64,000 nucleotides of DNA, from IMG/VR virus record IMGVR_UViG_3300035703_000008, positions 62,001 through 126,000 of that record; one strand, given 5' to 3'. The notes below the pieces were generated by a model, which was given only the letters and a program-made list of their open reading frames with translations, was not told where the DNA came from and did no database searches. Made by a program: the position numbers and the translations under genes. This document shows positions 1,294 through 61,600 of this stretch, in pieces. The first letter of the stretch is position 1. Each line of letters begins with the position of its first letter.

Positions 1294-1322
1294 TTGACAT
1301 CTAAAACCCGATATTGTATACT
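1294..1322 (+). promoter_or_regulatory. sigma70-type promoter upstream of tRNA-Ser
   Basis: TTGACA-17 nt-TATACT. Confidence 0.75.
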
Positions 1323-1332
1323 AACAACAACT

Positions 1333-1423
1333 GGAGACGTGACCGAGAGGCCGAAGGTGCTCCCCTGCTAAGGGAGTATGCGCCAAAAGCGCATCGTGGG
1401 TTCGAATCCCACCGTCTCCGCCA
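1333..1423 (+). tRNA. tRNA-Ser(GCU)
   Basis: Acceptor GGAGACG/CGTCTCC, anticodon arm CTCCC-CTGCTAA-GGGAG, long variable arm, G73, CCA. Confidence 0.96.
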
Positions 1424-1427
1424 AGAC

Positions 1428-1860
1428 GTGCTGTCTAATCAACAGCTAGTGTGGTCCGCATGTCGAGAAGTGGTGTGATAGCCACAGGACCTTACCATTT
1501 GGAGCAAATGGCGCTGGCAATGCGACAATCCTCCCTGGTCGGGAAGCGGGTGGAAGGCATGCGTGATGGGATTGAGACCGCTCGGTTCTTGATGTGCTAC
1601 AATTACCGCCGCAGGGGGGAAGCACCTGTTGTCATCAGTGAAGGCGTGAGCGAAAGTATGGCCATGCCCCAACTACCAGGGGAGAGCACCACCCCGAGCT
1701 TCTGCGACTCTGTTATAGAGCGGACCTGATCCTGGCCGGTCAGGATGAGCATGCGGCGGGGGACATTGGCGTTGGATTCATAGTCCAGATAACGTTCGGG
1801 TCTTAAACACAGGGTAGTGCCTTCACCGATGACGATATCGCCACAGATATCTCGGCATAA
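1428..1860 (+). ncRNA. candidate large structured non-coding RNA (possibly GOLLD-like; unassigned)
   Basis: About 430 nt directly after tRNA-Ser with no convincing gene. Many stems: GCTGT/ACAGC, GTGGT/GCCAC, CCATTTG/CAAATGG, CAATCC/GGATTG, GCAGG/CCTGT, GCGTG/CATGC with a GAAA loop, GGGG/CCCC, CTCT/AGAG, CCTGATC/GGTCAGG, TGGAT/GTCCA, GATATC/GATATC, and long-range CCGCATG/CATGCGG. Confidence 0.5.
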
Positions 1861-1913: not shown

Positions 1914-2108
1914 ATGGATATATCCATATTACTATTATTGGCAGCAGTGGCAGTGCTTGTATTTTTGTTGAGCAAAAAACAGAACCGTCCGCAAAATCTC
2001 GATGTCAACAACGATGGCGTGCTCAATGAAAAAGATGCAGAAATATTAGATCAGAATTTGCCCAAAGATCCCGACCCCCGCGTCGAAGAATCCCGGGATC
2101 GTAGATGA
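1914..2108 (+). CDS. small membrane-anchored protein with an EF-hand/dockerin-like Ca-binding loop
   Basis: N-terminal hydrophobic helix, then DVNNDGVLNEKD. GGAG Shine-Dalgarno upstream. Confidence 0.65.
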   Translation: MDISILLLLAAVAVLVFLLSKKQNRPQNLDVNNDGVLNEKDAEILDQNLPKDPDPRVEESRDRR

Positions 2109-4262: not shown

Positions 4263-4499
4263 GTGGCCAGAATTACCAGCGAAACCGCTGCACAGAAAGT
4301 CGGTAGCAAATATGATCTCATCCTGATCGCGTCGCGACGTGCTCGCGAACTCAGACACGGACATGCACCCATGGTCGCTGCCGAAGACGACAACGAAGTG
4401 GTCATCGCTCTCAGAGAGATCGAACAAGGTCTTGTGGGTCGCGATTATCTTCTCAAGCAACCCGATCTCAAACACGAACCAAGGAAATCACGCACATGA
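4263..4499 (+). CDS. rpoZ: RNA polymerase omega subunit homologue
   Basis: MARIT...KYDLILIASRRAREL..GHAPMV...VVIALREIEQG matches the RpoZ pattern. GTG start with AGGA Shine-Dalgarno. Confidence 0.85.
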   Translation: MARITSETAAQKVGSKYDLILIASRRARELRHGHAPMVAAEDDNEVVIALREIEQGLVGRDYLLKQPDLKHEPRKSRT

Positions 4500-6516: not shown

Positions 6517-6669
6517 AGTTATACACGATGCTGTGGTGTAAATAAAGAAGACTTCGCAGGGGGATGCGCCCGGCAGCTCTGGATCTATCTGCCGGAATCG
6601 TTTGCACGGTGAGACTCCGTGAGAACAGTGGCAGTTCCTACACGCCCTGGGAGATGCCATAAATAAGGT

Positions 6670-6962
6670 TTATCGCTGTATGAAGCGCGGCGAAATCGGT
6701 TCTGGACGCGGGTTCGATTCCCGCCCGGTCCACCATAAGCATGTTCTTTGAGGTCTTGGTCGTTACCAGCGTGGCAAAAACGGCGACAGAGCATGCTTAT
6801 GATGGGCCGGACCTGGTTTCGACAGGGCAAGGAGTAGCCAAGTGGACAGCGGGGTAGGCGATGACCCTAAATCAAGCAAAACCTATAAACGCCAATGATG
6901 AGGTGTTTGCACTGGCCGCTTGAGCCATGCCGGGGTAGCTATACCTTGTTACCAAAAATAGC
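6670..6962 (+). ncRNA. ssrA: circularly permuted (two-piece) tmRNA: acceptor piece ~6670-6735, intervening segment 6736-6803, coding piece from 6804; tag ANDEVFALAA*
   Basis: The 3' tRNA-like part (GCGGG-TTCGATT-CCCGC-CCGGTCC-A-CCA, ends 6735) lies before the 5' part (GGGCCGG-ACCTGGTTTCGAC, starts 6804). G3-U70 alanyl determinant. P2 pairing ACAGCGG/TCGCTGT. pk1 GGGT/ACCC plus TAGG/CCTA. Resume codon GCC at 6891, tag stop at 6923. Confidence 0.93.
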
Positions 6963-6988
6963 AAAACCCGCTCCGGCGGGTTTTTTTT
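6963..6988 (+). terminator. rho-independent terminator after ssrA
   Basis: AAAACCCGC-TCCG-GCGGG followed by T8. Confidence 0.88.
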
Positions 6989-7061
6989 GATTTCTTCTCC
7001 TGGCAGTTAAATACATGCCAGCAGCGCCACCATCCCGGTGACGTCGGTTCAACCTCGACGC

Positions 7062-23670: not shown

Positions 23671-24739
23671 TACCCTGAGGTCAGAGATCCTTGACATCAC
23701 TGACCAGGTGTTGAGGTCAGGTCAAGTGATGTCTGGCAACTACACTGCCGAGTTCGAGCATTGGCTGGCACGCAAGAATAGATCAAAATTCGCGATCACG
23801 TGTCATTCTGGAACACAGGCCTTGGAGATCATCGCCGAGTTTTATCGTCAGCACTGGCCCTGCGATCCAGGACACACTCCCACGGTGGTCATGCCCAGCA
23901 TTTCTTATGTGGCCACTGCCAATGCATTTGTTCGAGCTAGATGGGATATAAGATTCGCTGATGTTGATGCCCATGGCATGCTTTCACTCAAGGACGTGCC
24001 CAACGATTCTCTCACACACTGGAATGCCATCTGCTTGGTGGGCTTGTATGGCCAGAGTGTGTATCAGTATTCAGACACACAGTTTTGGAAAAGTGTGCGA
24101 TACAAAAATCAAATCGTGATCGAGGATGGCGCCCAACATTGGCTCAGTGCCGGATCTTCGCGCATAGGGCATGCCACTGCCATAAGTTTTGATCCTACCA
24201 AAAATCTCGGCAACTACGGAAACGGTGGGGCGGTAGTCACCGACGACGAGGATCTAGCTACATTTGCACGAGCTTGGTGCGCGAATGGCAAGCCATATTA
24301 TCGCCAACCGGGCACCAACAGTAGGATGAGCGAAATAGATTGTGCCCAGATGTTGGTAAAAGTCAATCACTTGGACCAATGGCAGGTCCGTCGCCGGCAT
24401 ATCACTGAATACTGGTATAGTCGGCTGGCAGGAAAACGACAGGTGCGTAGTCTTGCAGATCTATCCAACATGGATACCCACTGTTTCCATAAATTTGTGA
24501 TTGATGCTGATCACAGGAATGACCTGCAAAGACATCTAAAAGAACACGGAATAGAAACTCGTGTACACTATGACCAGGCCTTGTTTGAACATGCTGGACT
24601 GAGTCAATTCATCAACCCCGGTGTGCTAAGTTCAGCGGCTTCGTTGTGTCGTCGTGTACTGAGCTTGCCACTCTACCCCGAACTCACGGATCTAGAAGTA
24701 GACTACATCATCGACCAGGTGATAGATTTCTCTTCATAA
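23612..24739 (+). CDS. DegT/DnrJ/EryC1/StrS-family PLP-dependent sugar aminotransferase
   Basis: SGTQAL, VATANA, IEDGAQ, SFDPTKNLGNYGNGG (PLP lysine), GTNSRMSE, VLSLPLYPEL. Confidence 0.93.
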   Translation: MKTTTAGLRIPFAGLPRQYNTLRSEILDITDQVLRSGQVMSGNYTAEFEHWLARKNRSKFAITCHSGTQALEIIAEFYRQHWPCDPGHTPTVVMPSISYVATANAFVRARWDIRFADVDAHGMLSLKDVPNDSLTHWNAICLVGLYGQSVYQYSDTQFWKSVRYKNQIVIEDGAQHWLSAGSSRIGHATAISFDPTKNLGNYGNGGAVVTDDEDLATFARAWCANGKPYYRQPGTNSRMSEIDCAQMLVKVNHLDQWQVRRRHITEYWYSRLAGKRQVRSLADLSNMDTHCFHKFVIDADHRNDLQRHLKEHGIETRVHYDQALFEHAGLSQFINPGVLSSAASLCRRVLSLPLYPELTDLEVDYIIDQVIDFSS

Positions 24740-27700
24740 ATGCATAGCTGGCCAACCAGGCCCACTCGTAGCTTTTCCTGAGCTGTTCAAAATCCCCACC
24801 GACTTCTTCGTAGTAGGCCACGGCATCTTCGGCTCCCCACACTGACCATTCGCCGTAGGGTCCTTCTCCACCAGTGAGCCAGGCACGGAGACGATATTCG
24901 TTTTCTACGTCAGGCAGACTGGCTCGTAGTTTGATCGCTTCGCGGAAGGCCGTGCGCCACGCAGTCCAGGCATCGGTGTTGTAGCGAGCCACACCCGACA
25001 TGATGGGCACTACTTCGTGTGCATCGTCTAGTGTGAAGTCCAAGCCACGACCGGGATTGGCCAACACCAGGTTCTTGTTGTAGGCGATCATGGCCTGGTG
25101 TCCATAGATCAAGCGATTCACAGGATTCCTAGCATGGAAGATGTAGTGCTTGGGCTGTTGCATGCGATCCGGCTGCCATGACCAGTCAAAGTCTGGATTC
25201 ACATCCAACTTGGCAAACACAGCAAAGAACCAAGGCGTTTCACTGGCTCGAGCAGCGGCATGATAAGCAGCAGCACGGCCCGGCACTCGATCCACTCGCA
25301 CCAAGCGGTTGGGTTGGCCTTGTTTGCGCAACATCAGGCTGCCCCAGTTTCGGTCAGCTTGGGGTTCTCCATTGGAGATGTAGACGATGTCCAAGGGCTG
25401 GCCTTTTAGTGTGTCGCGATGGCTGCGATCGATGTGGGGATAATCGTACATCTGTGTTCGAATGTAAGGTACAGCATTCTTGGGCACCACCACTACGCCA
25501 GCACCGGGATCCATGGGAATGATGGTCTTGGTCTTTTCTCTCCAGAGACTCACTGTGGGCATCTTGGCGTTGCCCACATCTCTGTTGGCGAACACGGCCA
25601 AGGGTCCCGAGAACGTGCTCGAGATCACTGTGTCCACATGCGTGTCCTGATCATTGCGGATCACTGGCATGGGCCAACGCGGTACTCTCTGATCTTCGCA
25701 GTAGTTCACGGTCTCAAACCAATCTAGCAGTTCCAGTTCGTTGATCTTGTCTCTCAACGCCCGCACAGGCACATAGAATGTGTCACCGAATTTCTGTTCC
25801 GCACTGGGGAACACGTGCAGCATGTCACGTTGCCAGGCTTCGGGTTGCCACGAGAAATCAAATCTCGAATAGTCGCATACACTGCCCGTCACCCATATGT
25901 GTTCGGCTTCGACGTCGGCGATCAAGCGTTTTAGAGTGTCAAGATAATTATCAAAGTATCTCGCGGTCTTGACCACGCGATAGCGACCCTGCAGGAACTC
26001 AATGGTCTTTGGTGCTTCGGCATTGCCAAAATCTATCACATAGATGTCCGAGGCATCGGCAGGTGCTACCACTTGTTGATCCTGCACAAAATTAAGATTG
26101 GGAAACTCTTCTATGCCCGCAGCCCACTTGGCGTGCCGCTCGAACTCCCAGCGATTGATCAGGAATGTGTCCGACCATTTGTTCCACTGGCTACCAAACA
26201 CGTGAGTCATGAAGCTCTGCCAGGGCTGTGCGTGCCAAGCGAAATCAAAGTCTGAGTAGTCGTTTTCGCTGCCTATGACCCAGAATCTCATGCTCTTGGT
26301 CTTGGTGAGACAGCGTTGTATGGTGTCCATCACAGAATTTACATAACGCACTTTTTGTATGTGAGGATACTGTTCGCGAAGGCGTTCAAACCTCGACGCG
26401 CTCATGGCATTGCTGCGATCCATGTAAAAAATATCCAATACACGCACCACGGATTGAGGCTGTTCTTGGATGATCTGTGGAGGATCGCCGGCAAACTTGA
26501 GATCTTGGGCTCCGGGCACAGTGTAGGTGAGTCCCACTGATGCTTGATATTCTGTACCGAAGTGGTAGATATAAGGCGGCTCTTGTGGGTCGGGTATCCA
26601 TGAATAGTCGATGACATCGGCATCTACTTCTTCGGGCACTGACCATCGCGCGCGATCAGGCAAGATGCGGGCCAGTGGTTCGGTCATGAACTTGCGCTCA
26701 GTGGCACCTGGCACATGATATTCAATGGTGCTCATCTGTGTGGCAGGCCACCACTGGTTGCCAAACACATAGATGTAAGGCGGTGAGCCAGGATCGGGCC
26801 GCCAGGAACGATCAAACTCGAACACATGATCAGTAGTCACTTGCCAACACTGATCGGTGGCAACAAGACGTGCCTGCGGTTCAGACATGAATTTGCGTTC
26901 TGTTGCCCCAGGAACGCGATATTCTACCGTGGGCATGATCTCTGCAGGCCACCACTGATTGCCGAACACATAGATGTAAGCGGGCGATCCAGGATCGGGT
27001 TCCCACGAGTAGTCAAACTCGCAGTCATAATGCGTGACGAACTCGTTGGGTCTGGCTGCGCGTCGTGCTCGCGGTTCCGACATGTACTTGATCTCTGTGG
27101 CTCCAGTCACACGATACTGCAAGGCCGGACGTTGTTCAGGTGTGAGCCATTGGTTACCAAACACATAGACGTAGGCGGGATCTGTGGGATTTGGGCGCCA
27201 CGAATAATCAAACTCTTCGATGTCATCCAACTGCTCCCAGGCCGAGACATCCTGTGCTAGAGTGGCCACCGGTTCTGCCATGTACTTGATCTCAGTGCCA
27301 CCTGTGTTGTATACCACAGTGGGTTCCAGCACAGCAGGGTTCCACTGGTTGCCAAACACATAGGTCATGGGAGGATCAAAGGGATTGGGTTCCCACGAGT
27401 AATCAAAGTCGCTGACAGCGAGATTGTGGCCAAACAACGCAGGCTGCGGCAGTCTGCGTGTGCGTGTGTCCATGTACTTGACTTCGGTGGCACCCGGTAC
27501 CGTATATCGCACACTGGCTTTGTATTCAGCCGGGTTCCACTGGTTGCCCCACACATAGATGTAGGCCGGATCCCGAGGATTGGGTCGCCAGGTCCAGTCC
27601 CAATCCTCTTCGGCTATGGGTTCGAGGATTTCCCAGTGATCGCGCGATTCTGACAACTGCGCTCGCGGTTCATCCACGAACTTTTCTTGAGTCGCTCCAG

Positions 27701-30062
27701 CCACACGATAACGAACAGTGGGCATGACAGTACCAGGATAATGCTGATTACCAAAAACATAGATGTAGGGTTCCTCTGTGGTGTCAGGATGCCAGCTAAA
27801 ATCAAAATCGGTGATAGATTCTAACACCTCCCAGTGATGATCCTGGGAGGCCTTCCTTTGATGCACAATGTCAACAAACTTGCGTTCTTGGGCTCCAGGA
27901 ACCACATAGCAGGCTCCGCCGTTTCTCTGCCACTGGGTGGCAAACTCATAGATGTAGGCAGGGTCGCCCGGATCGGGACACCAGGTATAGTCCACGGTGC
28001 TGTCGTCAATGACATCGGGCGTGACCCAGTTTTCGAGGTTGGGCAGCAGCCTAGGACCTCCGGTCATGTACTTGCGCTCAGTGGCGCCCGGTACACGATA
28101 TTCCAGGGTGGGCATCTTTTCTGCAGGCCAGTGTTGATTGCCCCACACATAGATATAGGCCGGATCTCGGGGGTGTGGTCTCCATGACCAATCAAACGAT
28201 GCATCGTCGATGCTGTGCAATCTGTGCCAATTGATCTGGCTGGCCGACAATGTGGCACGTGGAGACTCGTGGTATTTGCGTTCTTCCGCGCCGGGCATGT
28301 GGAATACGGGTCCACCTTCGTCGTACCATTGCGTGCCGAACTCGTGGGTGTAGAGCGGATCAAGTGGGTTAGGATGCCAGGTGTAGTCAAACCCCACAAT
28401 GTTGTCGGGCACGGACCACAACGACAAGTCCTTGATTGATCTCACCCGGGGAGATTCCAGCAACTTGACCTCTCCGGCTCCGGGTACTGTGTACGTGACG
28501 CCACTGGCTGGTTGATGCTGGCTGGGGAAGTGATAGATGTAGGCAGGTTCTAGGGGATTGGGATGCCAGGTATAATCCACACTATCGGCATTGATCCAAG
28601 CTGGCACCGACCATGGCTCACGATCTCGAGCATGTGCTACTACCTGGAAGGCGTCTACGAGCTTGATCTCTGTGGCCCCAGGTACAGTGTACGTGACACC
28701 ACTCACTGGTTGATGTTGATCTGGGAAGTGGTAGATGTAGGGCGGATCAAGTGGATTGGGATGCCAGGTGTAGTCAACGCCAGTGACTTCAGCAGGTACG
28801 TTCCATGCGGTATGTTCAACCCGAGTGGTCCTGACTTGGAAAGCATCCACCATCTTGATCTCTGTAGCCCCAGGTACTGTATAGGTAACGCCACTAATGG
28901 GTTGGTGTTGATCCGGGAAGTGATAGATGTAGGGCGGATCTAGTGGGTTTGGGTGCCAAGTATAGTCAACATTGTCTACAAATTCAGGCACCGTCCAGTA
29001 TTCGCGATTTTCTTTGATTGCCTTGGCTTGGAAGGCATCCACCATCTTGATCTCTGTAGCCCCAGGTACTGTGTAGGTAACGCCACTTACCGGTTGATGT
29101 TGATCCGGGAAGTGATAGATGTAGGGTGGGTCAAGTGGGTTTGGGTGCCAGGTGTAATCAATACCTACTACTCCATCGGGCACTGACCAGTTTGTGTTGT
29201 CTGTTTTTTTAGTGGTTACTTGGAAAGCATCTGTGAGCTTGATCTCCGTGGCACCAGCGACCGTATAGGTAACGCCACTTACCGGTTGATGTTGATCCGG
29301 GAAGTGATAGATGTAGGGTGGGTCAAGTGGGTTTGGGTGCCAGGTGTAATCAATACCTACTACTCCATCGGGCACTGACCAGTTTGTGTTGTCTGTTTTT
29401 TTAGTGGTTACTTGGAAAGCATCCGTGAGCTTGATCTCTGTGGCACCAGGCACTGTATAGGTAACGCCACTCACTGGCTGGTGTTGATCTGGAAAGTGAT
29501 AGATGTAGGGCGGATCCAGTGGGTTTGGATGCCAGGTGTAGTCGACGCCGGTGATGTGTTGTGGCACCATCCAATTGGTAGGATCAGGTCTGCGTTGTGC
29601 TCGTTGATCGTGTACCAGTTTCGTGCCAGCAGTGCCGGGATACACGGGCCCGCCTGCACTCTGCCACTGTGTACCAAAATGATATTCATAGTCGGGTTCA
29701 GCGAAATCTGGATGCCAAGAGTAATCGAACCCAGTAGTGCCACGTGTGTTGAGCCACACAGACTCGTCGGCACGTCGTGTTATGCGTCGATCCTGATGAT
29801 AGTTGGTGTCAGTGTAGCCTGATTTGGGCACTAGGTATGTGCCTGAGTCTCGCTGCCATTGGCTGGGCCATGCATGACGTTGATGGCTTTGCCAAGGCAC
29901 CGGCTCCCAAAGCCAATCCCACCCTTGATAGTCCGATAAGTAGTTTACGATCCAGAAATATCGAGTGCGACTCAGTTCGCAGGCTTCTTGGATCGATGCT
30001 GCAGATCGTTCATGCGGGAAAAGTCCCGGCTTCTTACCACTGATATAGAAAACATCAAACAT
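24708..30062 (-). CDS. 1784-aa multidomain protein: 17 tandem ~64-aa repeats flanked by glycosyltransferase-like domains
   Basis: Repeat core D(Y/F)xWxPxPxDPxYxYxF(G/P)xQ. The C-terminal domain (LDIVYISNGE...AYHAAA...WRTAFREAIKL) resembles the 46116 protein. Confidence 0.85.
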   Translation of the reverse strand: MFDVFYISGKKPGLFPHERSAASIQEACELSRTRYFWIVNYLSDYQGWDWLWEPVPWQSHQRHAWPSQWQRDSGTYLVPKSGYTDTNYHQDRRITRRADESVWLNTRGTTGFDYSWHPDFAEPDYEYHFGTQWQSAGGPVYPGTAGTKLVHDQRAQRRPDPTNWMVPQHITGVDYTWHPNPLDPPYIYHFPDQHQPVSGVTYTVPGATEIKLTDAFQVTTKKTDNTNWSVPDGVVGIDYTWHPNPLDPPYIYHFPDQHQPVSGVTYTVAGATEIKLTDAFQVTTKKTDNTNWSVPDGVVGIDYTWHPNPLDPPYIYHFPDQHQPVSGVTYTVPGATEIKMVDAFQAKAIKENREYWTVPEFVDNVDYTWHPNPLDPPYIYHFPDQHQPISGVTYTVPGATEIKMVDAFQVRTTRVEHTAWNVPAEVTGVDYTWHPNPLDPPYIYHFPDQHQPVSGVTYTVPGATEIKLVDAFQVVAHARDREPWSVPAWINADSVDYTWHPNPLEPAYIYHFPSQHQPASGVTYTVPGAGEVKLLESPRVRSIKDLSLWSVPDNIVGFDYTWHPNPLDPLYTHEFGTQWYDEGGPVFHMPGAEERKYHESPRATLSASQINWHRLHSIDDASFDWSWRPHPRDPAYIYVWGNQHWPAEKMPTLEYRVPGATERKYMTGGPRLLPNLENWVTPDVIDDSTVDYTWCPDPGDPAYIYEFATQWQRNGGACYVVPGAQERKFVDIVHQRKASQDHHWEVLESITDFDFSWHPDTTEEPYIYVFGNQHYPGTVMPTVRYRVAGATQEKFVDEPRAQLSESRDHWEILEPIAEEDWDWTWRPNPRDPAYIYVWGNQWNPAEYKASVRYTVPGATEVKYMDTRTRRLPQPALFGHNLAVSDFDYSWEPNPFDPPMTYVFGNQWNPAVLEPTVVYNTGGTEIKYMAEPVATLAQDVSAWEQLDDIEEFDYSWRPNPTDPAYVYVFGNQWLTPEQRPALQYRVTGATEIKYMSEPRARRAARPNEFVTHYDCEFDYSWEPDPGSPAYIYVFGNQWWPAEIMPTVEYRVPGATERKFMSEPQARLVATDQCWQVTTDHVFEFDRSWRPDPGSPPYIYVFGNQWWPATQMSTIEYHVPGATERKFMTEPLARILPDRARWSVPEEVDADVIDYSWIPDPQEPPYIYHFGTEYQASVGLTYTVPGAQDLKFAGDPPQIIQEQPQSVVRVLDIFYMDRSNAMSASRFERLREQYPHIQKVRYVNSVMDTIQRCLTKTKSMRFWVIGSENDYSDFDFAWHAQPWQSFMTHVFGSQWNKWSDTFLINRWEFERHAKWAAGIEEFPNLNFVQDQQVVAPADASDIYVIDFGNAEAPKTIEFLQGRYRVVKTARYFDNYLDTLKRLIADVEAEHIWVTGSVCDYSRFDFSWQPEAWQRDMLHVFPSAEQKFGDTFYVPVRALRDKINELELLDWFETVNYCEDQRVPRWPMPVIRNDQDTHVDTVISSTFSGPLAVFANRDVGNAKMPTVSLWREKTKTIIPMDPGAGVVVVPKNAVPYIRTQMYDYPHIDRSHRDTLKGQPLDIVYISNGEPQADRNWGSLMLRKQGQPNRLVRVDRVPGRAAAYHAAARASETPWFFAVFAKLDVNPDFDWSWQPDRMQQPKHYIFHARNPVNRLIYGHQAMIAYNKNLVLANPGRGLDFTLDDAHEVVPIMSGVARYNTDAWTAWRTAFREAIKLRASLPDVENEYRLRAWLTGGEGPYGEWSVWGAEDAVAYYEEVGGDFEQLRKSYEWAWLASYAFMKRNLSPGR
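26520..29740 (-). repeat. in-frame tandem repeat array (~192-nt period, 17 units)
   Basis: 17 occurrences of the repeat core counted in the translation. Units at 29081 and 29273 are identical over roughly 150 nt. Confidence 0.85.
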
Positions 30063-52631: not shown

Positions 52632-55600
52632 TTAATCGCCTCTTATAAACCTAGCAGCCACAGTGTCGGTTTCCTGGAGAGGAACACCATCAGAAGCTGT
52701 GCCCGGACCGGGTTGGTACCAACTGAGTCCACGACGAACTTGTATGCTGACCTGGTATCCATTGGTGGGCGGCTGCGAGAACTGTATGGTCACGGGATCT
52801 CCGTCCGTGATCACATAGCCGCCTACTTGTAAAATACCGCCTACATAGACTTGTACGCTGTCATCAAGCTCGGTACTGTCTACACCCAACACAGAAATTT
52901 CTGTGGCTTCAAATATGGTGGTTCGTCCGTCGGCCAAGAAGTTCTGGGCCACGATGCGATCCTGATATTCAGCTGGTAACATGTTTCCGACGCCAATGTC
53001 ATACACGGCAGCGCCCGCTGCGTGTGCTGCTACCCCTGTGCCTGCAGTACCGCGACGTAATCCTGTCAAGGTATTGGTGGCCAGATCACGCGATCTATAA
53101 GTGATACGTTCGCCGTCTATGGTGACCATTCCAAAGAATCCCTCGGCCAGATTTGGCTGTGGAAACTTGCTGGCGTCCTGCACTGAGATCACTGTGCTGT
53201 CAGTGGTCATGGCCTGGGTCAATATGCTGCTGGTGCTTTCTGTGATACGGTAAGTGGTCTGCTGGCCACGCATGTCCTGGAATATACGGAATTCAATGCT
53301 GCCAGGTACTGTGCTATTGGTCATAGTGGTAATAGCCACCACATCCGCGGCGTTGATTATCTCGCCTAGGATAGTGACCGTAGTACCAGTGACTGTGAAT
53401 CCCACTTCTGGGAACAAGAACTCGCCGTTGAGAGTCACGGTCATCCTGCTGGTGTCAGTGATGACGCGGCCGATGTTGAAGTTGTTGGTCTGAACCGACA
53501 GGCCCACGCCAAAATCATAGGGATCGTAGTCATAGCTGCCTGTGGTTCCTGGAGAAGAAGCCGAATCAAATCCCACATCTACTGTGATGCCTTCTGTGGT
53601 GGGTCCCACGAATACCTGTGTGAGCAAGCCTTGTTGTGCTGTGTCATTGAATGTGGTTATGCTCAATGTATCGCCGGGGATGGGAACCAGACCGCCCGAT
53701 GATCTCCACTGCATGAAATTGCCCGAAATAACATACTGTGCCGCGGTCCATACACTGATTACGATGCGGCTACCTGCAGGTGGCATCTGTAAAAACATGA
53801 TAGATCTTGGTGAGCTGCCATCCCAGGGAACCAACTCCCAGTCCACAAAGAGTTGTTGCTGTTGATCATCAACATATACATATACATCATTTTCAGTCAC
53901 AGCTGATTGATCATAATCTCCGCTGTAGGGCAAATAATACTCAAGGCTGCTGCCATCTGCGATCTCTTCGCTGCTTTCGGGCGGTCTTGCACGCACGCCG
54001 TTTTTCTCTACGATGGCATTCACAGCATTGGTGCCTTGCATGCTGTTAAACAAGGTAAAGGTGTAAGGACCGCCACCGTAACCCATGACCTGCTGCTGCG
54101 GAGTGCTCCAGTCGTTGAGTGTGTTGGTACCAAATGCTATCACAGTGACCCAGTCACTGCTGGTCCACTCGTCGTCAAATACCACTCGTGAGCTTACAGT
54201 GTCGTTGACTTGGGCTGTGAAATCTGTGTACCTAGCACCGTTGACAAACACCAAGAACTGGGTGGTCACAGAATCAATCACCAATGGTACCGGGACTATC
54301 ACGGTATCGCCTATGTCTTCGCCCGAGAAAGATCTACGATAGAGCTGGCTGCCACCACCCACACTGTAGGCCATGATCACCAGCACATCCCCGGTAACAG
54401 CACCTGAATTCACAGTCACTGACAAGTTGCCCCAATCCACTGTGAATTGGCGGCCTATGGCCAGCTCTGTACCTTGTGTGCGGTTGAACACACGTACCAC
54501 CACTGTGTAGTCAAGGATGCCATCAAAGCTGTAACTAGATCCCGATACGGTAAACACATAGTTGATGGCCTGCGATGTAAACCCATGCCCATCCAACTCC
54601 CAGTCTGATCCCGGAGTAGTCAACACGCGGATATCGAGCGTGTCAAATATAGCACCGGGTACCAGTTCTTCAGGAGCATGACTGCTATAGGTGTCAACAA
54701 ATGCACCGCCGTCAACGTCGATGGCTGCTGGGCCTACACCAAGATAGGGATCTACAAACTCGCTTTCGTAGATAGCGTCCAAGAGATTTTCATCATATGT
54801 GGGCAAGCCTTCAGGACCGTAGTCGATGTTGTCAAACGGCAAGGTATCAAAACCAGCGCCGCCGATGTAGCGATCAGCACACCATTGCGAAGGAGTGAAT
54901 GTTTCGGGCTCCCTTGGTACTACCACATAGGTACCGGTGTCTTCGTCGTAGGCGTAAAGTGTGGCCAGTTGTACATCGCGATAGCCTTCTACGTACAACG
55001 GATCCTGGCTGGCTGCTGGATCAAACAAGGGATTCACATAGCTGCCACTGTCAAAGCCGGGATTGAAATTAAAGCCCAATCCAAATACTTGTACGCCCGG
55101 GTAATCTACTCCGGATATCAAGAGAGCGAGATCCAGTCCAGGTTCATTGGCAGTGGGAGTATAAAATCCCATGGTACGGTCTACGCCACTGAGCGCAGAT
55201 GCTGGAACCAAAGTCCACTCATCGGGGTCAAATGTGATGGACTCCACGGCTGTGCTGTCGTCGGCCGAGGCTGCCCACACACGGTCGTCGTAGCGAACCA
55301 TCTCGCCATTGGCATAATCTCGCCCGGGCTGCCATTCCTGGATGGTGCTGGAATACTGATAACGGTCATACTTGATGGTGGTCGTGATTGATCGTACCAG
55401 ACCGTTGCCCATGTTGGCCACGGCCTGTGCTCGTGTGCCAAGATAGTTTAGTATAGTGGTACCATACACAATGTTGCCGGAGGCGGTGCTGGTGGGCGGC
55501 ACACTTTCAAACATGCCAGATTCGGCCACGCTGTAGACCAAGCCGCCGGGAGCTTCATAGATCTGGCCGGCAAATGCTTCGATGCTGGGCTGCCAAACAC

Positions 55601-58600
55601 GCGCTGCTGGGAGACCGCCATCAAGCACGAGCATGGCAGTGGTGGTTCTAGGCTGTCCAGGATTGACCACTGTGATGCCAGTGACCTGTCCTTGGCTGTT
55701 GATCGTAGCTGTGAGCACAGCCGTATCGTCATCTTCGACGATCACTGTGGGAGCCACGATGTAGCCTGATCCAGCACGAGCTATGGTCACGCTTTCAATG
55801 GTCAAGAGATAGTTTTGATACCACTGGCTGTAAGGCCATTCGGTCCAGATCGCAGCAGTGTCAGGGTAGCTGCTGGTAGTGCTCAAGGTGTTGGTGTTGT
55901 CCAACACCGGGCTCACAAACAGATTTTCACTGGCGTTCCAGAATGCTGGGAGATCGAAATCGTTGACACTGCCTTGGTAAACATCTTGGCCCTGATATAT
56001 GAGATTGAACTCGCGTATCTGCACATGATAGGGTTTGACTTCGCGGATGTAGTCTAGCACAAAGTCTTGATTGTCCTGACGATAGACCTGGAAAGGCACC
56101 AATTCACGTATGGTGTGGTCCACGTCTACTAGACTGGTCTTGACCAGCCATGTGGGAGCGATCTGTTCCGTGAGTATAAAGTTGAACATCAAGATCAAGA
56201 GACGATTGCGTTCAATGGCCAGCTCGTCGATGAATATCTCTTGATTGAGAGCCTGTATGATCTTGCGTGTTTCGATGCTGGGTTCTTTGTCAAAATATTG
56301 TGCATCAAAAACTTCAACGTCAAACCCAAATCTGCCGATGCTATAGTCCCAGATGCTGGCGGAAATTTCTATGGTTCCGCTTTCTAGAGCCACTCGATCC
56401 CAGCCAGTCGCTGTGCGCTGGTAGATTTCCCATTTGTTCTGTGCATTGGCCGTGACTTTGACTGCGCTGCCCACTGGTACTGTGAGAGTTTCCAGCAGCG
56501 AATCGTTGGCCACTTCTGTGACTGGACGTGTGAGAGGATTGAAGCCGGGTTGGTACCAGTTCACATAACTCCAATACAGCTTGGTGTCATAGTTTTGTAC
56601 TCGTATCAAAGCCAGCTCACGCTCGCCAAACAAGGATCCCGACACCACTTGATAGATGGTCCACAGTCCGTTGTTGGTGGCGTCACTGGCCACGAGATAG
56701 CGATAGCCCAAGGATACCTGTGCGAGATCCTGGAATGCCAGTTCTTCATAGTTGGCAAGACGCTTGTCCCAGGCGCCACTGCCAGGCGTGGGTTCGGGTT
56801 CCTCGCTGTTGAGCAAGGGAGACCTACGGGTTTCGGCCAAGGGGAACTGTGCCATCACACGATTGGCACGTTCGAGGTAGTTTTCCAGGGCCAGGAATCT
56901 GTTTATAAACATGCTCTGGCGCGGCCTCACTGCTACGCCATACTTTTCGCTGGGCGTCAAGAAAGGATCAGGCACAGCGCGACCCTGTGCATCTGATCCA
57001 GCGAGGCTGTCTGTGAGCTTCTGATACAAACTATCTACCAAGAAGCTGTCAGGGCGATTCTCGGCCACCAGCTGATATTCTAGGTGTACTGCATTTTCAG
57101 TGCGTTCGAGATCGTATTCCACGTGCAGCACTGTGTCTTCGGCGCTGATATATTGTAAGCCGTTATAGATGGCCACTGTGCTGGCATTGATGGGAACCAC
57201 ATAGCTGATTCCGCTGCTGCGCGGAGATTCGATGTAGCGAGCCAATGTTTCGATACTGAGTGTTTTTCCGGCCGCGGTATCAACTGTGGTGATACCGGAT
57301 ACCCAGAAGAAGTAGTTGGTGATAAAAAATCCCTGTTCGTTGACTTCGCTGGTCACTGTGTAGCTGAAGTCGCTGAGAGGTTCTCCTGGTCCGGTGTACT
57401 CCACAGGTGGGACTGGACTGCGCACCCATTGATAGATGTCTATGCTGCTGCCTGGGAAGGTCTGTCCCCATCTGCGGCTGGCATAAACTATGTCGTCCTG
57501 GTTGGGATCAATGAATCTCACATTGTTGGTATTCCACCAGATCTGACCCACGCGTTCTTGCGCCCACTTGACACCGTAGTTGTTGATATCTCCTACATTG
57601 TAGGCTGCAGGGTCCACGGCTCCGATGAAATCGAGATTCTGACGGACTGCGCCCAACACTGTGCCCTGGAGAGGATCAAAATAGTCAAAATACTGGCGCG
57701 CATTGCCTTGCACTCGATCGTACATGAACACTGTGTTGAGCAGGCTGATATCCACCACCGGCTGCTGGGATCTCACCACTTGCCAGGCCGGACTCAGTGT
57801 GGGATTCACAAACTGCCCAACTCGTCCAAAGTCGGCTGCGGCGCTGTCACCGCGGTCTTGGCTGGGTGCACCAACCAAAAGCACACCGGTGGTGAGATTG
57901 AGACTGGCTCCAAACTGCTCGAGTTCAGAAACACCCTCGTCATAGATCTCTTGACCAAACACAAATCTTCCGGGATTGTTTACTGTAGAGTTGGTACTGG
58001 GCAGGAAGTCGTATTCGTACACAGCACCACTCTGTGTGACCGGGTCAGAGAATACCGTAGACTTGGCATCAAATCGAGTGGTTCCCGCATCAAAGGTAGT
58101 GGGACGAATAGTGCTGCCGTTGGGCGCGCCAATTACCACTCCCAGTGAGGTCGAACTCAGTGCGATACTGGATCCAAAATAAGCATCGTCCTGTGCCACA
58201 GGAGCAGTGATGGTCTGTTGATACACATAGATGTCAAAACCCACGCTGTCAAACAACGTGCCCGAACCCGGCAAAACCTGTATCTTGTCGGCTGCAGGAG
58301 CCGTGGCCGAGTTCTTGATGCTGACCGTGATCCGTCCAGCAGCCACTCGTATCACTGAGCCCGCAGCCGGTGCTGCAGAGAATGTGATCTGCTTGGTGGT
58401 GTTGTTGTAGGTGTATCCCGAAGTTTGTATCACATCATTGATGTAGACCACCGTGGTATACGAACTGGCGCTGCTGTAGATTGACCCGATGTCAAACACT
58501 CGAGTAGCACCGTCGCCCGCGATTTCTAGATCCGGACCATACACGACATCAACGTTGGGTAGATCTCCGGCTGTGATAGCTGCTTGTATGTCTCGAGCGA

Positions 58601-61600
58601 ATGATTCAGCCCAGCCTGTGGGTTTCCAGTAAACAGCATCATCCAAGGTGATACCGATGGGCACATCTATGCGTGCCAGGAAAATATCACCGCTGCTGAT
58701 TACGAATGTGCCTGACAACCAGGTCTGACCGCTGCTCCATGCTGCCGGTGCGGTGAGGGTCACAAACACATCGTTGATACGTACAGCTTCTCCAACTTCG
58801 GCAGCGAGATTGGGATTGGCAATGGTGCTGGTAATGGTGCCATACACACGAGCTTGATTCTGCCAATACTCCACTTGTCCGGCCTGCGGTGCTGTGGTGG
58901 TCTGTCGTGGTGCGCCAACAAAGAAGCTGCAGCTATTGGTACACTGCTCTACGGCTGTGCCAAACACAGCATCTTTGCTGGGGGTCTGGCTGGTGAGATT
59001 CTGCAGCAGCGAGAACTGATTGGTACTGATCTCAATCTCGTCGCCCACTGTGAGTTGGACCTGCGGGAGCAGAGTCACGGTGCTGCCACTCACAGTATAA
59101 TCACCGTTGATGAAATAATCAGCATCGCTCAGTCGATTGCCATTTAGGAACACAAATACTGGGCCTTGCGGCGCGACGGTTGTGGTATAGCTGCGAACGT
59201 CTGTGCTGATCACAGCAAATCGTTGTACGCTGCGATCAAAGATGTAGCTGCGTCCAGCTTGAGTGAATGTGTCGACTGTGGAGTTGGGAGAACCTATCAT
59301 GATGGTGCGACCTTCGCCGCTGACATTGATGCTGCTGCCAAATCGATCGGCAGCACCCACGCCTGACACCGTGATGGTGTCAACATAATCCCAGTAGGTA
59401 CGATTCACTACCTGGATTACTGCACCCAAGGGCGGACTGGCCACAAACGTGATCTCTCCCAGCCCACTATCGTAGGTATAGTCAATGAAAGGTCGATAAA
59501 ATGCTTCGTTGACTTTGACCGAGAATGAAAAGATGTCAGATACGTTGTAGAGGTACGACGAAAGATCAAAAGTCAGAGTAGATGTAGACCCTGTGCCTGA
59601 TACTTTTTCAATGGCAGTAATGGCGTTTGGACTCACAAAAAACACTAGAGTACCAGCAGTCAGCGTAGGAGTGTCAATGATAAATTGCGTCTGGCTAGGA
59701 ACTGACAATATCGTTGTACCAGGCACAAAAGTGCCCGATCCTGACAGATAATGAAGAGTTTGTCCAGGCACCAACCCATCAGTGCTGGAAATGTTAATAG
59801 TGGTAGATCCGGCGCTGACGATAGTGGAATAGTTTGGTCCTGTTTGCAACACACGCAATACCAGATCGTTGGCCGGTGTGGATCCGCCCAATAATGTCCC
59901 AGGTATGGTCACAGTTTCAAGATAAGAGTATCCCGATCCACTGTCCTGGAGTGTTGGAGAATATTCGCCTCGAGCGACATTCACATAGAAAGATGCGCCC
60001 GACCCAGCAATCGAAGATCCAGTCACACCCGAATAGTTCTGCACATCAAGTTGATATGAACTGCGTCGAGCGATGACTAGGACCAGACCCGGAGCTGGTG
60101 TATTCGTAAGGATCACCACATTGTTGATTATAGAATAGTCAACTCCGGGAGCGAGTATCGCATTAGCGAGAGTCACGCTGATCTGTGTGTCAAATGCGGT
60201 ATCGTAGACTATGAGACCAGCAAAAGAATACTGTGTTTCCCCACGTTCAGTGATGTAGGTGACCACTTGTTCTTCGAGGTCCTGGCGTGCATAAGCAAAC
60301 ACTTTGTTGTCACCGGGGCTGCCCACATACATCCAAAGTTCGTCCTGGCTGATGCCCACAGATCGACCAAAGTCGCCGGTGCCCGAAAAATCGTTTTCAG
60401 GATTGACCAGCAGCTGGCGCTGCTCGTAGTTGTTGGCGCTGTTGTCGCGATAGATGGCTACTGCATAACCTTTGCCGCTGTAACTGTCTGCAGCGCCGGC
60501 CACTGCCCAGTTTTCACTGCCGATCTCTACGGCATTACCAAAGCCGGCCACACCGGCCACACGCAGGCTCTGTATGTCCTGGTCCTGCACATAACGATTG
60601 TTGCTCTCTTTGACGAACGTGTAGACACCACCACGACCTTGATCGTAGCCAGGAGCACCGACCAGGGCTGCTAGATTGCGATTGCTTTGTGTGACAGCAG
60701 CACCAAATCGTTGATCAGCGCTCTCATCCGATGGCTCCAGGCTAGTGGTCAGCGAGTAAGGATCGGTTTTTTCCAGCACTGCCCAGCGATCTTCGCCGGT
60801 GTTGTCGACCCATACCCGAGCACCAGCCACGAGACTGCGTGCATAAGGAAGATTCACGATGTCTGATGGTTGTGCTACACGTGCTGATTCCAACACGAAC
60901 GCCACGCCTTCGCCGGTGTAGGCAGCTTGAGTGCCAACAAATACGAAATCGACGATCACGGTTGTGAGTGAGGGCACTGCACGCACTTGATAGACACCGT
61001 TCACAGCATCATTGAAGAATCGTATAATGATCTGATCGTTCACTGACAGGCCGTGTTGTGCATCAAACTGCACCAGGGCACGATTGTTGAGATTGTTAGA
61101 GACCGTGGTCACTACGCCAGGAACACGCTCACAACGATAGATATTCCAATCATAGGAGTTGACTTTGGCTACCCATACAGTGGTGCCCACGCCGATGTCG
61201 TTGAGATCGTCGTTGAGGCTGCCGAGATCTTCAAAGTTGAACACAGTGTAGTCAACATCGTCGAGCTTGACATAACCTGCTGTGGGCAGTCCCACGTCAG
61301 TGACCGGAATGGTGGTCGTGGGCAGGAAATCTGGACTGTTGAGTTTGTAAGTGCTCTTCCAAACATTGCCGAACTGCACGGTCTGGTCGGCCTGGCTGGA
61401 TTGGCCTGGTGTGATCACTTGTATCAAAGCAGGGTCACTGCGCAGGCGTGCTTCGTTGAGCAAGAGCTCAACGTAGTTTCTGTTGGCAGTGGCGCCATAC
61501 TGGCTGCGCAGGATCGACCAGTATTCGTAGACATCGTACTCGGCGGTTTCTTTGCCAAGGTCAGCATAGGTAAACAGTTCAGCACTGCGTTTGGTACCTT

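What the first reader, a model, noticed from the sequence alone, without database searches (positions are those of the whole stretch)
1428..1860. Unassigned ~430-nt highly structured RNA co-transcribed with tRNA-Ser
Seen: the region starts 4 nt after the tRNA-Ser CCA, downstream of a near-consensus TTGACA/TATACT promoter. It is GC-rich and has at least 11 hairpins, GNRA-type loops (GCAA, GAAA) and a long-range CCGCATG/CATGCGG helix. The only ORF (1451-1729) has no ribosome-binding site or recognisable motif. Established: GOLLD and ROOL are large ornate RNAs found beside phage tRNA genes. Inference: a GOLLD-like or new phage ncRNA whose 5' end could be released by tRNA 3' processing.
Basis: partly seen in the sequence, partly recalled or inferred. 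Interest (0 to 1): 0.65.

Follow-up and report, generated by a model that had tools for sequence, protein, structure and literature searches.

The report
Two new phage tRNA-island RNAs
The 430 bases after a jumbo phage's tRNA-Ser gene hold neither one big RNA nor a protein gene. They hold two separate, conserved, intricately folded non-coding RNAs of unknown role that recur inside the tRNA gene arrays of more than 100 uncultured phages.

Summary
The window lies in a 209-kb IMG/VR virus record (a jumbo phage, about 60% complete). The region is real and non-coding, but it holds two RNAs, not one. RNA-1 (1426-1626) starts 2 nt after the tRNA-Ser CCA. A covariance model finds one full-length copy (105-243 bits) in each of more than 110 viral or metagenomic loci. 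In 98 distinct sequences, 95% of modelled pairs are kept and 38 of 57 pairs show compensatory changes. RNA-1 also has a kissing loop, further pseudoknots and a box C/D-type kink-turn. RNA-2 (1633-1831) belongs to a second family found in about 20 loci, with a covarying closing stem and a pseudoknot. Both sit in same-strand tRNA arrays, often flush against tRNAs on both sides, so tRNA processing probably releases them. In relatives the two RNAs are separated by a tRNA or occur in the other order. The 92-aa ORF is spurious: its frame is broken in 86 of 98 homologues and there is no codon periodicity. Neither RNA matches any Rfam 15 family, GOLLD and ROOL included. None was found in 185,579 prokaryote species genomes or 50,697 phage genomes. 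The closest analogue is T4's tRNA-Arg/rnaD/rnaC layout, also of unknown function. Expression could not be tested.

The parts
1294..1322 (+). Sigma-70-like promoter (TTGACA, 17-nt spacer, TATACT) between tRNA-Gly and tRNA-Ser. It is the presumed start of the tRNA-Ser/RNA-1/RNA-2 transcript.
   Evidence: Consensus scan gives 11 of 12 matches. This is a consensus match only; function is inferred.
1333..1423 (+). tRNA-Ser(GCT) with encoded CCA. Its 3' end abuts RNA-1.
   Evidence: ARAGORN; Rfam tRNA model, 55.7 bits.
1426..1626 (+). RNA-1, a conserved ~200-nt structured non-coding RNA. The 5' domain has hairpins H2 (1430-34/1442-46), H3 (1449-53/1457-61), H4 (1470-74/1481-85), H6 (1495-1500/1506-11) and H10 (1512-14/1522-24). 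The 3' rod has H7 (1529-37/1612-20), H8 (1546-49/1606-09) and H9, followed by a short tail at 1621-1626.
   Evidence: Model R1 hits 1424-1632 at 199.4 bits. Covariation statistics are, mutual-information pairs and extra pairs. There is a single copy in the 209-kb record.
1435..1479 (+). Kissing-loop pseudoknot between the H2 loop (1435-1441) and the H4 loop (1475-1480). A second pseudoknot joins the H3 loop (1454-1456) to 1487-1489. A third joins 1490-1492 to the H6 loop (1501-1504).
   Evidence: Paired loop variants across the family: AUCA/UGAU, GUCA/UGAC, UCAUAA/UUAUGA, AACG/CGUU, GCCA/UGGU. Column 41-77 is CG 86, AU 11, UA 1, and column 81-133 is GC 81, CG 13.
1556..1598 (+). H9 with a box C/D-type kink-turn. 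The C-stem is 1556-61/1593-98 and the 3-nt bulge is 1562-64. Tandem G.A and A.G pairs are 1565-66 with 1591-92, followed by a U.U pair at 1567/1590 and the NC stem. The tip is variable.
   Evidence: The C-stem is 98.6% paired, with covariation at 4 of 6 pairs. The bulge is (U/C)GU. The G and A of the sheared pairs are kept in 84-90 of 98 sequences, and a variant form in a minority keeps the same geometry.
1633..1831 (+). RNA-2, a second conserved structured RNA of a different family. P1 is 1638-45/1819-26, extended by 1633-36/1828-31. Px is 1672-77/1813-18. P2 is 1646-48/1808-10 and crosses Px, forming a pseudoknot. The conserved CUUAAAC is at 1802-1808. This subtype carries a ~50-nt insertion.
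   Evidence: Local nhmmer hit at window 1635-1830, E 6.8e-28. Alignment A9 and RNAalifold give 15 of 23 pairs with compensatory changes. P2 is paired in 13 of 13 with two covarying positions. Model R2, built from relatives only, finds 19 loci.
1451..1729 (+). Spurious 92-aa ORF (GTG start) lying over RNA-1 and the 5' part of RNA-2. It is not a gene.
   Evidence: Its 18 database 'homologues' are ragged (52-118 aa) and alike only over the RNA-1 core. The frame changes in 86 of 98 homologues and stops occur in 84 of 98. Entropy by codon position is 0.75, 0.70 and 0.69. There is no Pfam hit.
1834..1851 (+). Small 6-bp hairpin (GAUAUC...GAUAUC) after RNA-2 with no U-tract. Its role is unknown and it is not conserved in relatives.
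   Evidence: Read from the sequence. It is not called as a terminator and lies outside the conserved blocks.

Best explanation
Window 1426-1831 encodes two independent, stable, trans-acting structured non-coding RNAs: RNA-1 (~200 nt) and RNA-2 (~200 nt here, 150-210 nt in relatives). They are passengers of the phage's tRNA island.

Proposed biogenesis (inferred): they are transcribed with tRNA-Ser from the promoter at 1294-1322 and cut out of the polycistronic precursor by the host's tRNA-processing enzymes. 3'-end processing of the upstream CCA-bearing tRNA would set the 5' end. In the many relatives with a tRNA 6-14 nt downstream, RNase P would set the 3' end.

Each RNA folds into a compact pseudoknotted body. 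RNA-1 is a multi-hairpin 5' domain locked by a kissing loop and two further loop pairings. It is joined to a rod (H7-H8-H9) with two nearly invariant internal loops and a C/D-type kink-turn.

What is shown: sequence and structure conservation, placement, strand, the non-coding nature, and the independence of the two modules.

What is inferred: co-transcription, excision by tRNA processing, and stability.

Best guess at function (about 0.35): the invariant unpaired surfaces and the kink-turn bind a conserved host or phage factor of the translation or tRNA sphere. The RNA would then act as a scaffold or decoy during takeover or counter-defence, as is suspected for other tRNA-island RNAs. Less likely are a ribozyme (about 0.15) or a ligand-binding aptamer acting as a sponge (about 0.1).
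For: Family and structure:
- R1 finds one full-length copy per locus in 38 viral loci and 76 of 77 metagenome loci, at 105-243 bits.
- 95.2% of pairs are kept and 38 of 57 show compensatory changes; 0 of 500 shuffles match this, and slid controls give 36-48%.
- Extra tertiary pairs and the kink-turn are supported.
- RNA-2 shows covariation and a pseudoknot and occurs in 19 further loci.

Context (98 distinct RNA-1 loci):
- In 42 a tRNA ends 1-5 nt upstream.
- In 50 a tRNA starts 6-14 nt after H7.
- In 34 both are true.
- Within 400 nt there are 246 same-strand tRNAs and none on the opposite strand.
- RNA-2 is likewise flush with tRNAs.

Independence of the modules:
- L018, L208 and L209 have RNA-1, then tRNA-Asn, then RNA-2.
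- In L011 RNA-2 precedes RNA-1.
- Most loci have RNA-1 alone.

Non-coding.

Free-standing copies: 29 of 98 loci have no tRNA within 400 nt. L003 has its own promoter-like site placing the start at the same 5' end.

Precedents:
- T4 has tRNA-Arg, then rnaD 1 nt later, then rnaC 6 nt later. Both have unknown roles (PMC3014915).
- GOLLD and ROOL lie near phage tRNA islands (PMC12286853).
Against: - There is no expression data. Transcription, ends and stability are therefore inferred.
- No partner protein was found. The held 60% of the genome has no L7Ae-family, CCA-adding or RtcB gene.
- In this window no tRNA separates RNA-1 from RNA-2 (6-nt gap) or follows RNA-2. How those ends are made here is unknown, and the two may stay joined.
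- The single-sequence fold is no more stable than shuffles.
- The proposed function is a guess from anatomy and neighbourhood.
Confidence: 0.72

Rival explanations
1. The region is a protein-coding gene: the 92-aa ORF at 1451-1729, or the 93-aa stop-to-stop frame on the - strand at 1603-1884.
For: An open frame exists on the same strand as its neighbours. The 5.8-billion-protein database holds 18 'proteins' similar to it, some labelled hypothetical protein.
Against: - The database entries are 52-118 aa with different starts and ends, and are alike only over about 50 residues that coincide with the RNA-1 core.
- 86 of 98 homologues shift frame and 84 of 98 carry stops.
- Variability is flat across codon positions: 0.75, 0.70, 0.69. 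RNA-2 gives the same result in both candidate frames, and every homologue has indels that are not multiples of 3.
- There is no Pfam hit.
- Substitutions are compensatory in stems.
Confidence: 0.01
2. It is one large ~430-nt ornate RNA (GOLLD-like or ROOL-like) that needs both halves, joined by long-range helices.
For: The two modules are only 6 nt apart here, and also directly adjacent in L043 and L189. GOLLD and ROOL lie near phage tRNAs.
Against: - Neither half of the window, nor relatives L018 and L011, matches GOLLD, ROOL or any other Rfam family, even at E<=10.
- In L018, L208 and L209 a tRNA lies between the halves. In L011-type arrays the order is reversed. Most RNA-1 loci show no RNA-2 within reach.
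- The proposed long-range helix is not conserved.
Confidence: 0.05
3. They are cis-acting parts of the transcript: spacers or processing and stability elements for the tRNA precursor, or a riboswitch or leader controlling the downstream genes.
For: They always lie on the tRNA strand and are often flush with tRNAs. Downstream ORFs follow in this window (1914-2108 and 2105-2494).
Against: - In 50 of 98 loci the next feature is a tRNA 6-14 nt away, which leaves no room for an expression platform or a regulated ORF.
- 29 of 98 loci have no tRNA within 400 nt, yet the RNA is fully conserved there.
- A spacer would not need about 60 invariant unpaired nucleotides, a kink-turn and three tertiary pairings.
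- Most tRNA junctions in the same arrays are 1-10 nt and manage without such an element.
Confidence: 0.1
4. RNA-1 and/or RNA-2 is a ribozyme. It could be self-cleaving, defining its own ends where no tRNA flanks it, or it could act on tRNA ends.
For: - Both have pseudoknotted compact cores with invariant unpaired nucleotides, as in ribozymes.
- In this window no tRNA follows RNA-1 or RNA-2, so another end-forming activity is needed.
- Read by eye: the invariant H10 loop begins UGGC, complementary to a tRNA 3' GCCA. This resembles the CCA-binding UGGN of T-boxes and the GGU of RNase P.
Against: - There is no match to any known self-cleaving ribozyme, RNase P, group I or group II model in Rfam 15.
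- No conserved cleavage-site context was identified.
- Catalysis cannot be tested here.
- The resemblances of RNA-2 to the group I P7 region are short, not conserved across the family, and the topology differs.
Confidence: 0.12

Closest known systems
Phage T4 small stable RNAs rnaD (species 2, 119 nt) and rnaC (species 1, 139 nt)
   Same: The genomic layout is the same. Two non-tRNA RNAs lie in tandem directly after a tRNA in the phage tRNA cluster, on the same strand, with gaps of 1 and 6 nt. Their function is still unknown (PMC3014915). From general knowledge, they are released by tRNA-type processing.
   Different: There is no detectable homology. R1 and R2 give no significant hit on the T4 locus. 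The RNAs here are larger (~200 nt) and have a kink-turn and several pseudoknots. T4 rnaC ends in a tRNA-like T-arm and acceptor, which these lack.
GOLLD and ROOL ornate RNAs
   Same: They are phage-encoded, non-coding and of unknown function. They often lie near tRNA islands and are rich in pseudoknots (PMC12286853).
   Different: GOLLD and ROOL are much longer (GOLLD often over 800 nt; ROOL about 580 nt from memory) and form RNA-only nanocages. There is no Rfam match here. RNA-1 and RNA-2 are about 200 nt with different architectures. Whether they oligomerise is unknown.
Box C/D-type kink-turns (C/D sRNAs, U4 snRNA, and the kink-turns of T-box, SAM-I, lysine and OLE RNAs)
   Same: H9 of RNA-1 has the canonical arrangement. 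A covarying C-stem is followed by a 3-nt bulge, tandem sheared G.A and A.G pairs, a U.U pair and the NC stem. The sequence is UGAUG opposite UGA.
   Different: Here it is one local motif in a larger RNA. There are no guide regions or C'/D' boxes. No L7Ae-family gene is in the held genome. I did not test whether the likely proteobacterial host has one.
tRNA-punctuated passengers (mitochondrial tRNA punctuation, MALAT1-mascRNA, tRNA-snoRNA units)
   Same: A non-tRNA RNA occupies a 'tRNA slot' in a polycistron, so RNase P and 3' processing of the neighbours define its ends (spacing statistics).
   Different: Those systems are eukaryotic or organellar. In this case processing is inferred from geometry only.

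Membership tests
GOLLD (Rfam) | Match to the Rfam covariance model; many members over 800 nt; conserved 3' domain | tested here: not met
   cmscan of the whole window at gathering score and of 1250-2100 at E<=10 lists no GOLLD hit. Relatives L018 and L011 give the same result. Each conserved unit is about 200 nt.
ROOL (Rfam) | Match to the Rfam covariance model; length about 580 nt (from memory) | tested here: not met
   No hit.
GOLLD/ROOL-like 'tRNA-island RNA' (loose kind) | Phage-encoded structured ncRNA located in or beside tRNA gene clusters | tested here: met
   69 of 98 RNA-1 loci have a same-strand tRNA within 400 nt, and 34 are flanked on both sides. RNA-2 is likewise placed. The host record is viral.
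T4 rnaC/rnaD stable RNAs | Sequence or structure homology to T4 rnaC or rnaD | tested here: not met
   R1 with filters off on the T4 locus gives a best hit of 9.8 bits outside rnaC/rnaD, and 0.6 bits across the tRNA-Arg/rnaD junction. R2 gives no hit on L210.
T4 rnaC/rnaD stable RNAs | Tandem position directly 3' of a tRNA in the phage tRNA cluster | tested here: met
   T4 has tRNA-Arg, a 1-nt gap, rnaD, a 6-nt gap, then rnaC. The window has tRNA-Ser, a 2-nt gap, RNA-1, a 6-nt gap, then RNA-2.
T4 rnaC/rnaD stable RNAs | Accumulates as a discrete stable RNA in infected cells | not testable with these tools
Kink-turn motif | C-stem, 3-nt bulge, tandem sheared G.A/A.G pairs, NC stem | tested here: met
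   The C-stem is 98.6% paired with covariation. The bulge is (U/C)GU. G279 is kept in 90, A280 in 88, G367 in 84 and A374 in 88 of 98 sequences, and the U.U pair in 65 of 89 sequences with both bases. The three-dimensional kink itself was not tested.
Protein-coding gene | Reading frame conserved in homologues; third-position excess of substitutions | tested here: not met
   The frame changes in 86 of 98 homologues and stops occur in 84 of 98. Entropy is 0.75, 0.70 and 0.69. RNA-2 frames are flat and indels are not multiples of 3.
Riboswitch / cis-regulatory leader | Aptamer followed by an expression platform and a regulated ORF | tested here: not met
   In 50 of 98 loci the downstream neighbour is a tRNA 6-14 nt away. 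No riboswitch family matches.
Housekeeping RNAs (RNase P RNA, tmRNA, SRP RNA, 6S) | Match to the Rfam models; presence in bacterial genomes | tested here: not met
   No such hit on the region. The window's tmRNA is a separate gene at 6634-6987. Pattern scans of 185,579 prokaryote species genomes gave no true member.
Known self-cleaving ribozymes / group I introns | Match to the Rfam models; self-cleavage or splicing | tested here: inconclusive
   There are no model matches. Catalysis cannot be tested, and covariance models handle pseudoknotted ribozymes poorly.

The most novel reading that the evidence does not exclude
RNA-1 is a new class of tRNA-directed functional RNA. It would be a compact pseudoknotted ribozyme or binder that recognises the 3' CCA end of tRNAs through its invariant UGGC hairpin loop and GGUGG motifs, as T-boxes and RNase P do. 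Phages would deploy it, together with RNA-2 and a third array-resident RNA, as RNA-based counter-defence or tRNA quality control in their tRNA islands. If so, the 50-year-old puzzle of non-tRNA RNAs in phage tRNA clusters (T4 rnaC and rnaD) would gain a testable mechanism.
Probability: 0.12. Interest if true: 0.9.

Novelty: new variant of a known kind. Interest (0 to 1): 0.7.

Why it matters
Phage tRNA islands are now seen as counter-defence and takeover modules. The non-tRNA RNAs that live in them (T4 rnaC and rnaD since the 1970s, GOLLD, ROOL) still have no known function.

This work adds two, probably three, well-defined mid-sized RNA families. They have more than 100 natural sequences, strong covariation, several pseudoknots and a textbook kink-turn, and they sit in the slots of tRNA arrays. 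At about 200 nt they are small enough for chemical probing, crystallography or cryo-EM, and pull-downs. That makes them a practical entry point to what array-resident RNAs do.

There is also an annotation benefit. At least 18 'hypothetical proteins' in public protein collections are translations of RNA-1 and should be removed.

Tried and rejected
- Rfam at gathering and at E<=10 on the window and on relatives found nothing but tRNAs.
- Single-sequence folding showed no excess stability on either strand.
- blastn of 1290-1910 against 50,697 phage genomes matched only the tRNA-Ser part.
- The search for related loci with the neighbouring FNR-like protein found no relatives.
- Pfam on all candidate frames gave nothing.
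- Two pattern scans of genome contigs gave 0 hits and 41 chance hits. R1 confirmed none of them (one search was a syntax slip).
- Homology to T4 rnaC and rnaD was rejected.
- The CM's 'helix 1' (the 5' ACGU with GCG at 1522-24) was rejected. It shows no covariation and is 80% paired at one position, and the competing H10 hairpin covaries with CG 74 and UA 24. The G.U-rich 'H5' from RNAalifold was replaced by loop pairings that covary.
- By-eye resemblances were considered and dropped: T-box GGGUGGUACC, hammerhead CUGAUGA, group I P7 (R and S elements), and the 16S 530 loop. Each motif is either engaged in other covarying pairs or not conserved across the family.
- Partner proteins L7Ae, CCA-adding enzyme and RtcB are absent from the held genome.
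- The catalogue of 10,006 viral candidate RNAs (PMC10690425) could hold this family under a number, but its supplements are not held.
- Expression: no RNA run holds the stretch.
R2 was built from relatives only, the window was not given as a search source, and the window's own rows were analysed only locally.
- Pseudoknot counts were done in Python rather than by typing long bracket strings.

Full report
**Setting.** The window is bases 62001-126000 of a 208,932-base IMG/VR virus record, judged about 60% complete. Its genes fit a jumbo phage:
- A loose same-strand island of 13 tRNAs plus a permuted tmRNA lies at genome positions 49-69 kb.
- There is an RpoZ-like gene and an RNase H-like gene, several radical-SAM enzymes, and MoxR/VWA genes.
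- There are ORFs of 1784 and 3783 aa and a Peptidase_G2 tail-spike-type domain.

**The observation.**
- tRNA-Ser(GCT) occupies 1333-1423 and ends in an encoded CCA.
- A TTGACA-17-TATACT site lies at 1294-1322.
- The stretch 1424-1900 has no Rfam match, even at E<=10.
- As a single sequence it is not unusually stable. The z-score is +0.58 on the + strand and -0.07 on the - strand.

**The lead.** Searching the 92-aa ORF (1451-1729) against 5.8 billion proteins returned 18 'proteins' of 52-118 aa. Their starts and ends are ragged, and they are alike only over about 50 residues. That is the signature of gene callers translating a conserved RNA. Fetching their contigs and aligning the DNA showed a ~200-nt block (window 1426-1626) with visible compensatory changes and hairpin insertions.

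**RNA-1.**
- RNAalifold on 8 sequences gave 57 pairs, 23 of them with compensatory changes.
- The covariance model R1 then found exactly one full-length copy in each of 38 viral loci. Scores were 105-243 bits.
- On 34 distinct sequences, 95.2% of cells were paired and 38 of 57 pairs had double changes. No shuffle out of 500 did as well, and slid controls gave 36-48% paired.
- Mutual information on 98 distinct sequences recovered the modelled helices and added further pairs:
  - a 3-bp hairpin H10 with an invariant-start loop UGGCAAU (CG 74, UA 24);
  - a kissing loop between the H2 and H4 loops, with variants AUCA/UGAU, GUCA/UGAC, UCAUAA/UUAUGA, AACG/CGUU and GCCA/UGGU;
  - pairing of the H3 loop with the GGGU after H4 (CG 86, AU 11, UA 1);
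  - pairing of the next GGUU with the H6 loop (GC 81, CG 13).
- H9 carries a box C/D-type kink-turn. It has a covarying C-stem (98.6% paired), a 3-nt bulge, G.A and A.G pairs kept in 84-90 of 98 sequences, then a U.U pair and the NC stem.
- The CM's helix 1 and the G.U-rich H5 are not supported.
- About 60 unpaired nucleotides are nearly invariant.

**RNA-2.** The 3' half of the finding looked unconserved at first. Closer relatives changed that. L018, L208 and L209 have, after RNA-1 and a tRNA-Asn, a second element whose ends align with window 1633-1831.
- The closing stem covaries completely: UUAGUGAGAGU/ACUCUCACUAA in L018 against CAUCAGUGAAGGC/GCCUUCACCGAUG here.
- A local HMM hits window 1635-1830 at E 6.8e-28 and finds 15 further loci.
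- RNAalifold on 15 sequences gives 23 pairs, 15 with compensatory changes. These include all 7 pairs of P1 and 4 of the 6 pairs of the long-range helix Px.
- A 3-bp helix P2 that crosses Px is paired in 13 of 13 sequences, as CUG/CAG, CCG/CGG or GUG/CAC.
- Model R2, built from relatives only, confirms 19 loci. It finds nothing in T4 or in 15 bacterial control loci.

**Two RNAs, not one.**
- In L018, L208 and L209 a tRNA separates the two modules.
- In L011-type arrays RNA-2 lies upstream of RNA-1, with three tRNAs between them.
- In the window, L043 and L189 they are adjacent.
- Most RNA-1 loci have no RNA-2 within reach.

**Not coding.**
- Over 1451-1626, variability by codon position is flat (0.75, 0.70, 0.69). 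The frame changes in 86 of 98 homologues, and 84 of 98 have stops.
- For RNA-2, both candidate frames are flat, and every homologue has indels that are not multiples of three.
- No Pfam family matches any frame.

**Context and likely biogenesis.** Among the 98 distinct RNA-1 loci:
- In 42 a same-strand tRNA ends 1-5 nt before the conserved ACGU.
- In 50 a same-strand tRNA starts 6-14 nt after the last H7 pair.
- In 34 both are true.
- All 246 tRNAs within 400 nt are on the same strand.

RNA-2 is likewise flush with tRNAs; in L018 it fills the gap between tRNA-Asn and tRNA-Met exactly. The RNAs thus occupy 'tRNA slots', which implies release by RNase P and tRNA 3'-end processing. This is an inference. 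Another 29 loci have no tRNA nearby, and L003 has its own promoter-like site that places the start at the same nucleotide. RNA-1 is therefore an autonomous unit and not a tRNA accessory. In this window no tRNA follows either RNA, so the 1627-1632 junction and the 3' end of RNA-2 must be made in another way, or not at all.

**Distribution.**
- There is one copy of each RNA in the held genome.
- blastn finds none in 50,697 sequenced phage genomes.
- No true member is found in one genome for each of 185,579 prokaryote species.
- Members number 120 or more in JGI and ENA metagenome contigs. The run labels point mostly to freshwater and lake samples, but small-share runs were not verified.

**Comparison with known systems.**
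- The nearest analogue in layout is T4: tRNA-Arg, then rnaD after 1 nt, then rnaC after 6 nt. Their roles remain unknown (PMC3014915). There is no detectable homology.
- GOLLD and ROOL share the tRNA-island habitat (PMC12286853). They share neither size, sequence nor architecture with these RNAs.
- No paper describing these families was found. The catalogue of 10,006 viral candidate RNAs (PMC10690425) could include them unnamed, but its supplements are not held.

**Function.** Function is unknown, and what follows is inference. The compact folds, invariant loops and kink-turn argue for a trans-acting RNP scaffold or decoy, or for a ribozyme, acting in the tRNA and translation sphere. The invariant UGGC at the start of the H10 loop is complementary to a tRNA 3' GCCA; this is a lead only. 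The held genome has no L7Ae, CCA-adding enzyme or RtcB gene.

**Limits.**
- No expression evidence exists. No RNA run holds the stretch.
From then on, no letters of that stretch were sent to any search tool.
- Alignments fitted to R1 lean towards its structure. The tertiary pairs were counted on that alignment, and some loop columns are imperfectly aligned between subtypes.

Noticed in passing
L011:5083-5292 (also L094:1816-2023 on the - strand, L024:1519-1725, L157:4668-4990): A third conserved non-tRNA element ('RNA-3') has a ~130-nt conserved core followed by a U-run. It fills the ~210-nt gap between a tRNA and RNA-2 in several arrays. It is nearly identical among 4 loci, so there is little covariation yet, and it has no Rfam match.
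   Followed up: partly
window 6634-7014: A permuted (two-piece) tmRNA of betaproteobacterial type, with tag ANDEVFALAA, lies inside the viral record 5 kb downstream of the finding. It hints at a betaproteobacterial host. A porin-like ORF and an MFS transporter follow it.
   Followed up: partly
window 4263-4499: A phage-encoded RNA polymerase omega-like gene (RNA_pol_Rpb6, E 5e-16). The same family lies near RNA-1 in L003-L007, so there is loose synteny among these phages.
   Followed up: partly
public protein collections (P0001-P0018): Eighteen database 'proteins', some named hypothetical protein, are translations of RNA-1. They are annotation artefacts that seed spurious protein clusters.
   Followed up: yes
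L091 (JACCDU010716148.1, 785,472 bp) and L104 (JACCDG010129944.1, 583,758 bp): RNA-1 copies (199 and 203 bits) lie on metagenome contigs of 785 kb and 584 kb. These are either very large phage genomes or cellular contigs. Either way, they bear on the claim that the family is virus-only.
   Followed up: no
window 1914-2108: The 64-aa ORF just after RNA-2 has an N-terminal hydrophobic segment and a Dockerin_1 match just above cut-off (E 5.6e-5, 23.7 bits against a cut-off of 22.9).
   Followed up: no
window 24708-30062 and 52632-63983 (- strand): Giant ORFs of 1784 aa and at least 3783 aa. The first has no Pfam hit and the second was not searched. Such ORFs are typical of huge phages.
   Followed up: no
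   Followed up: no
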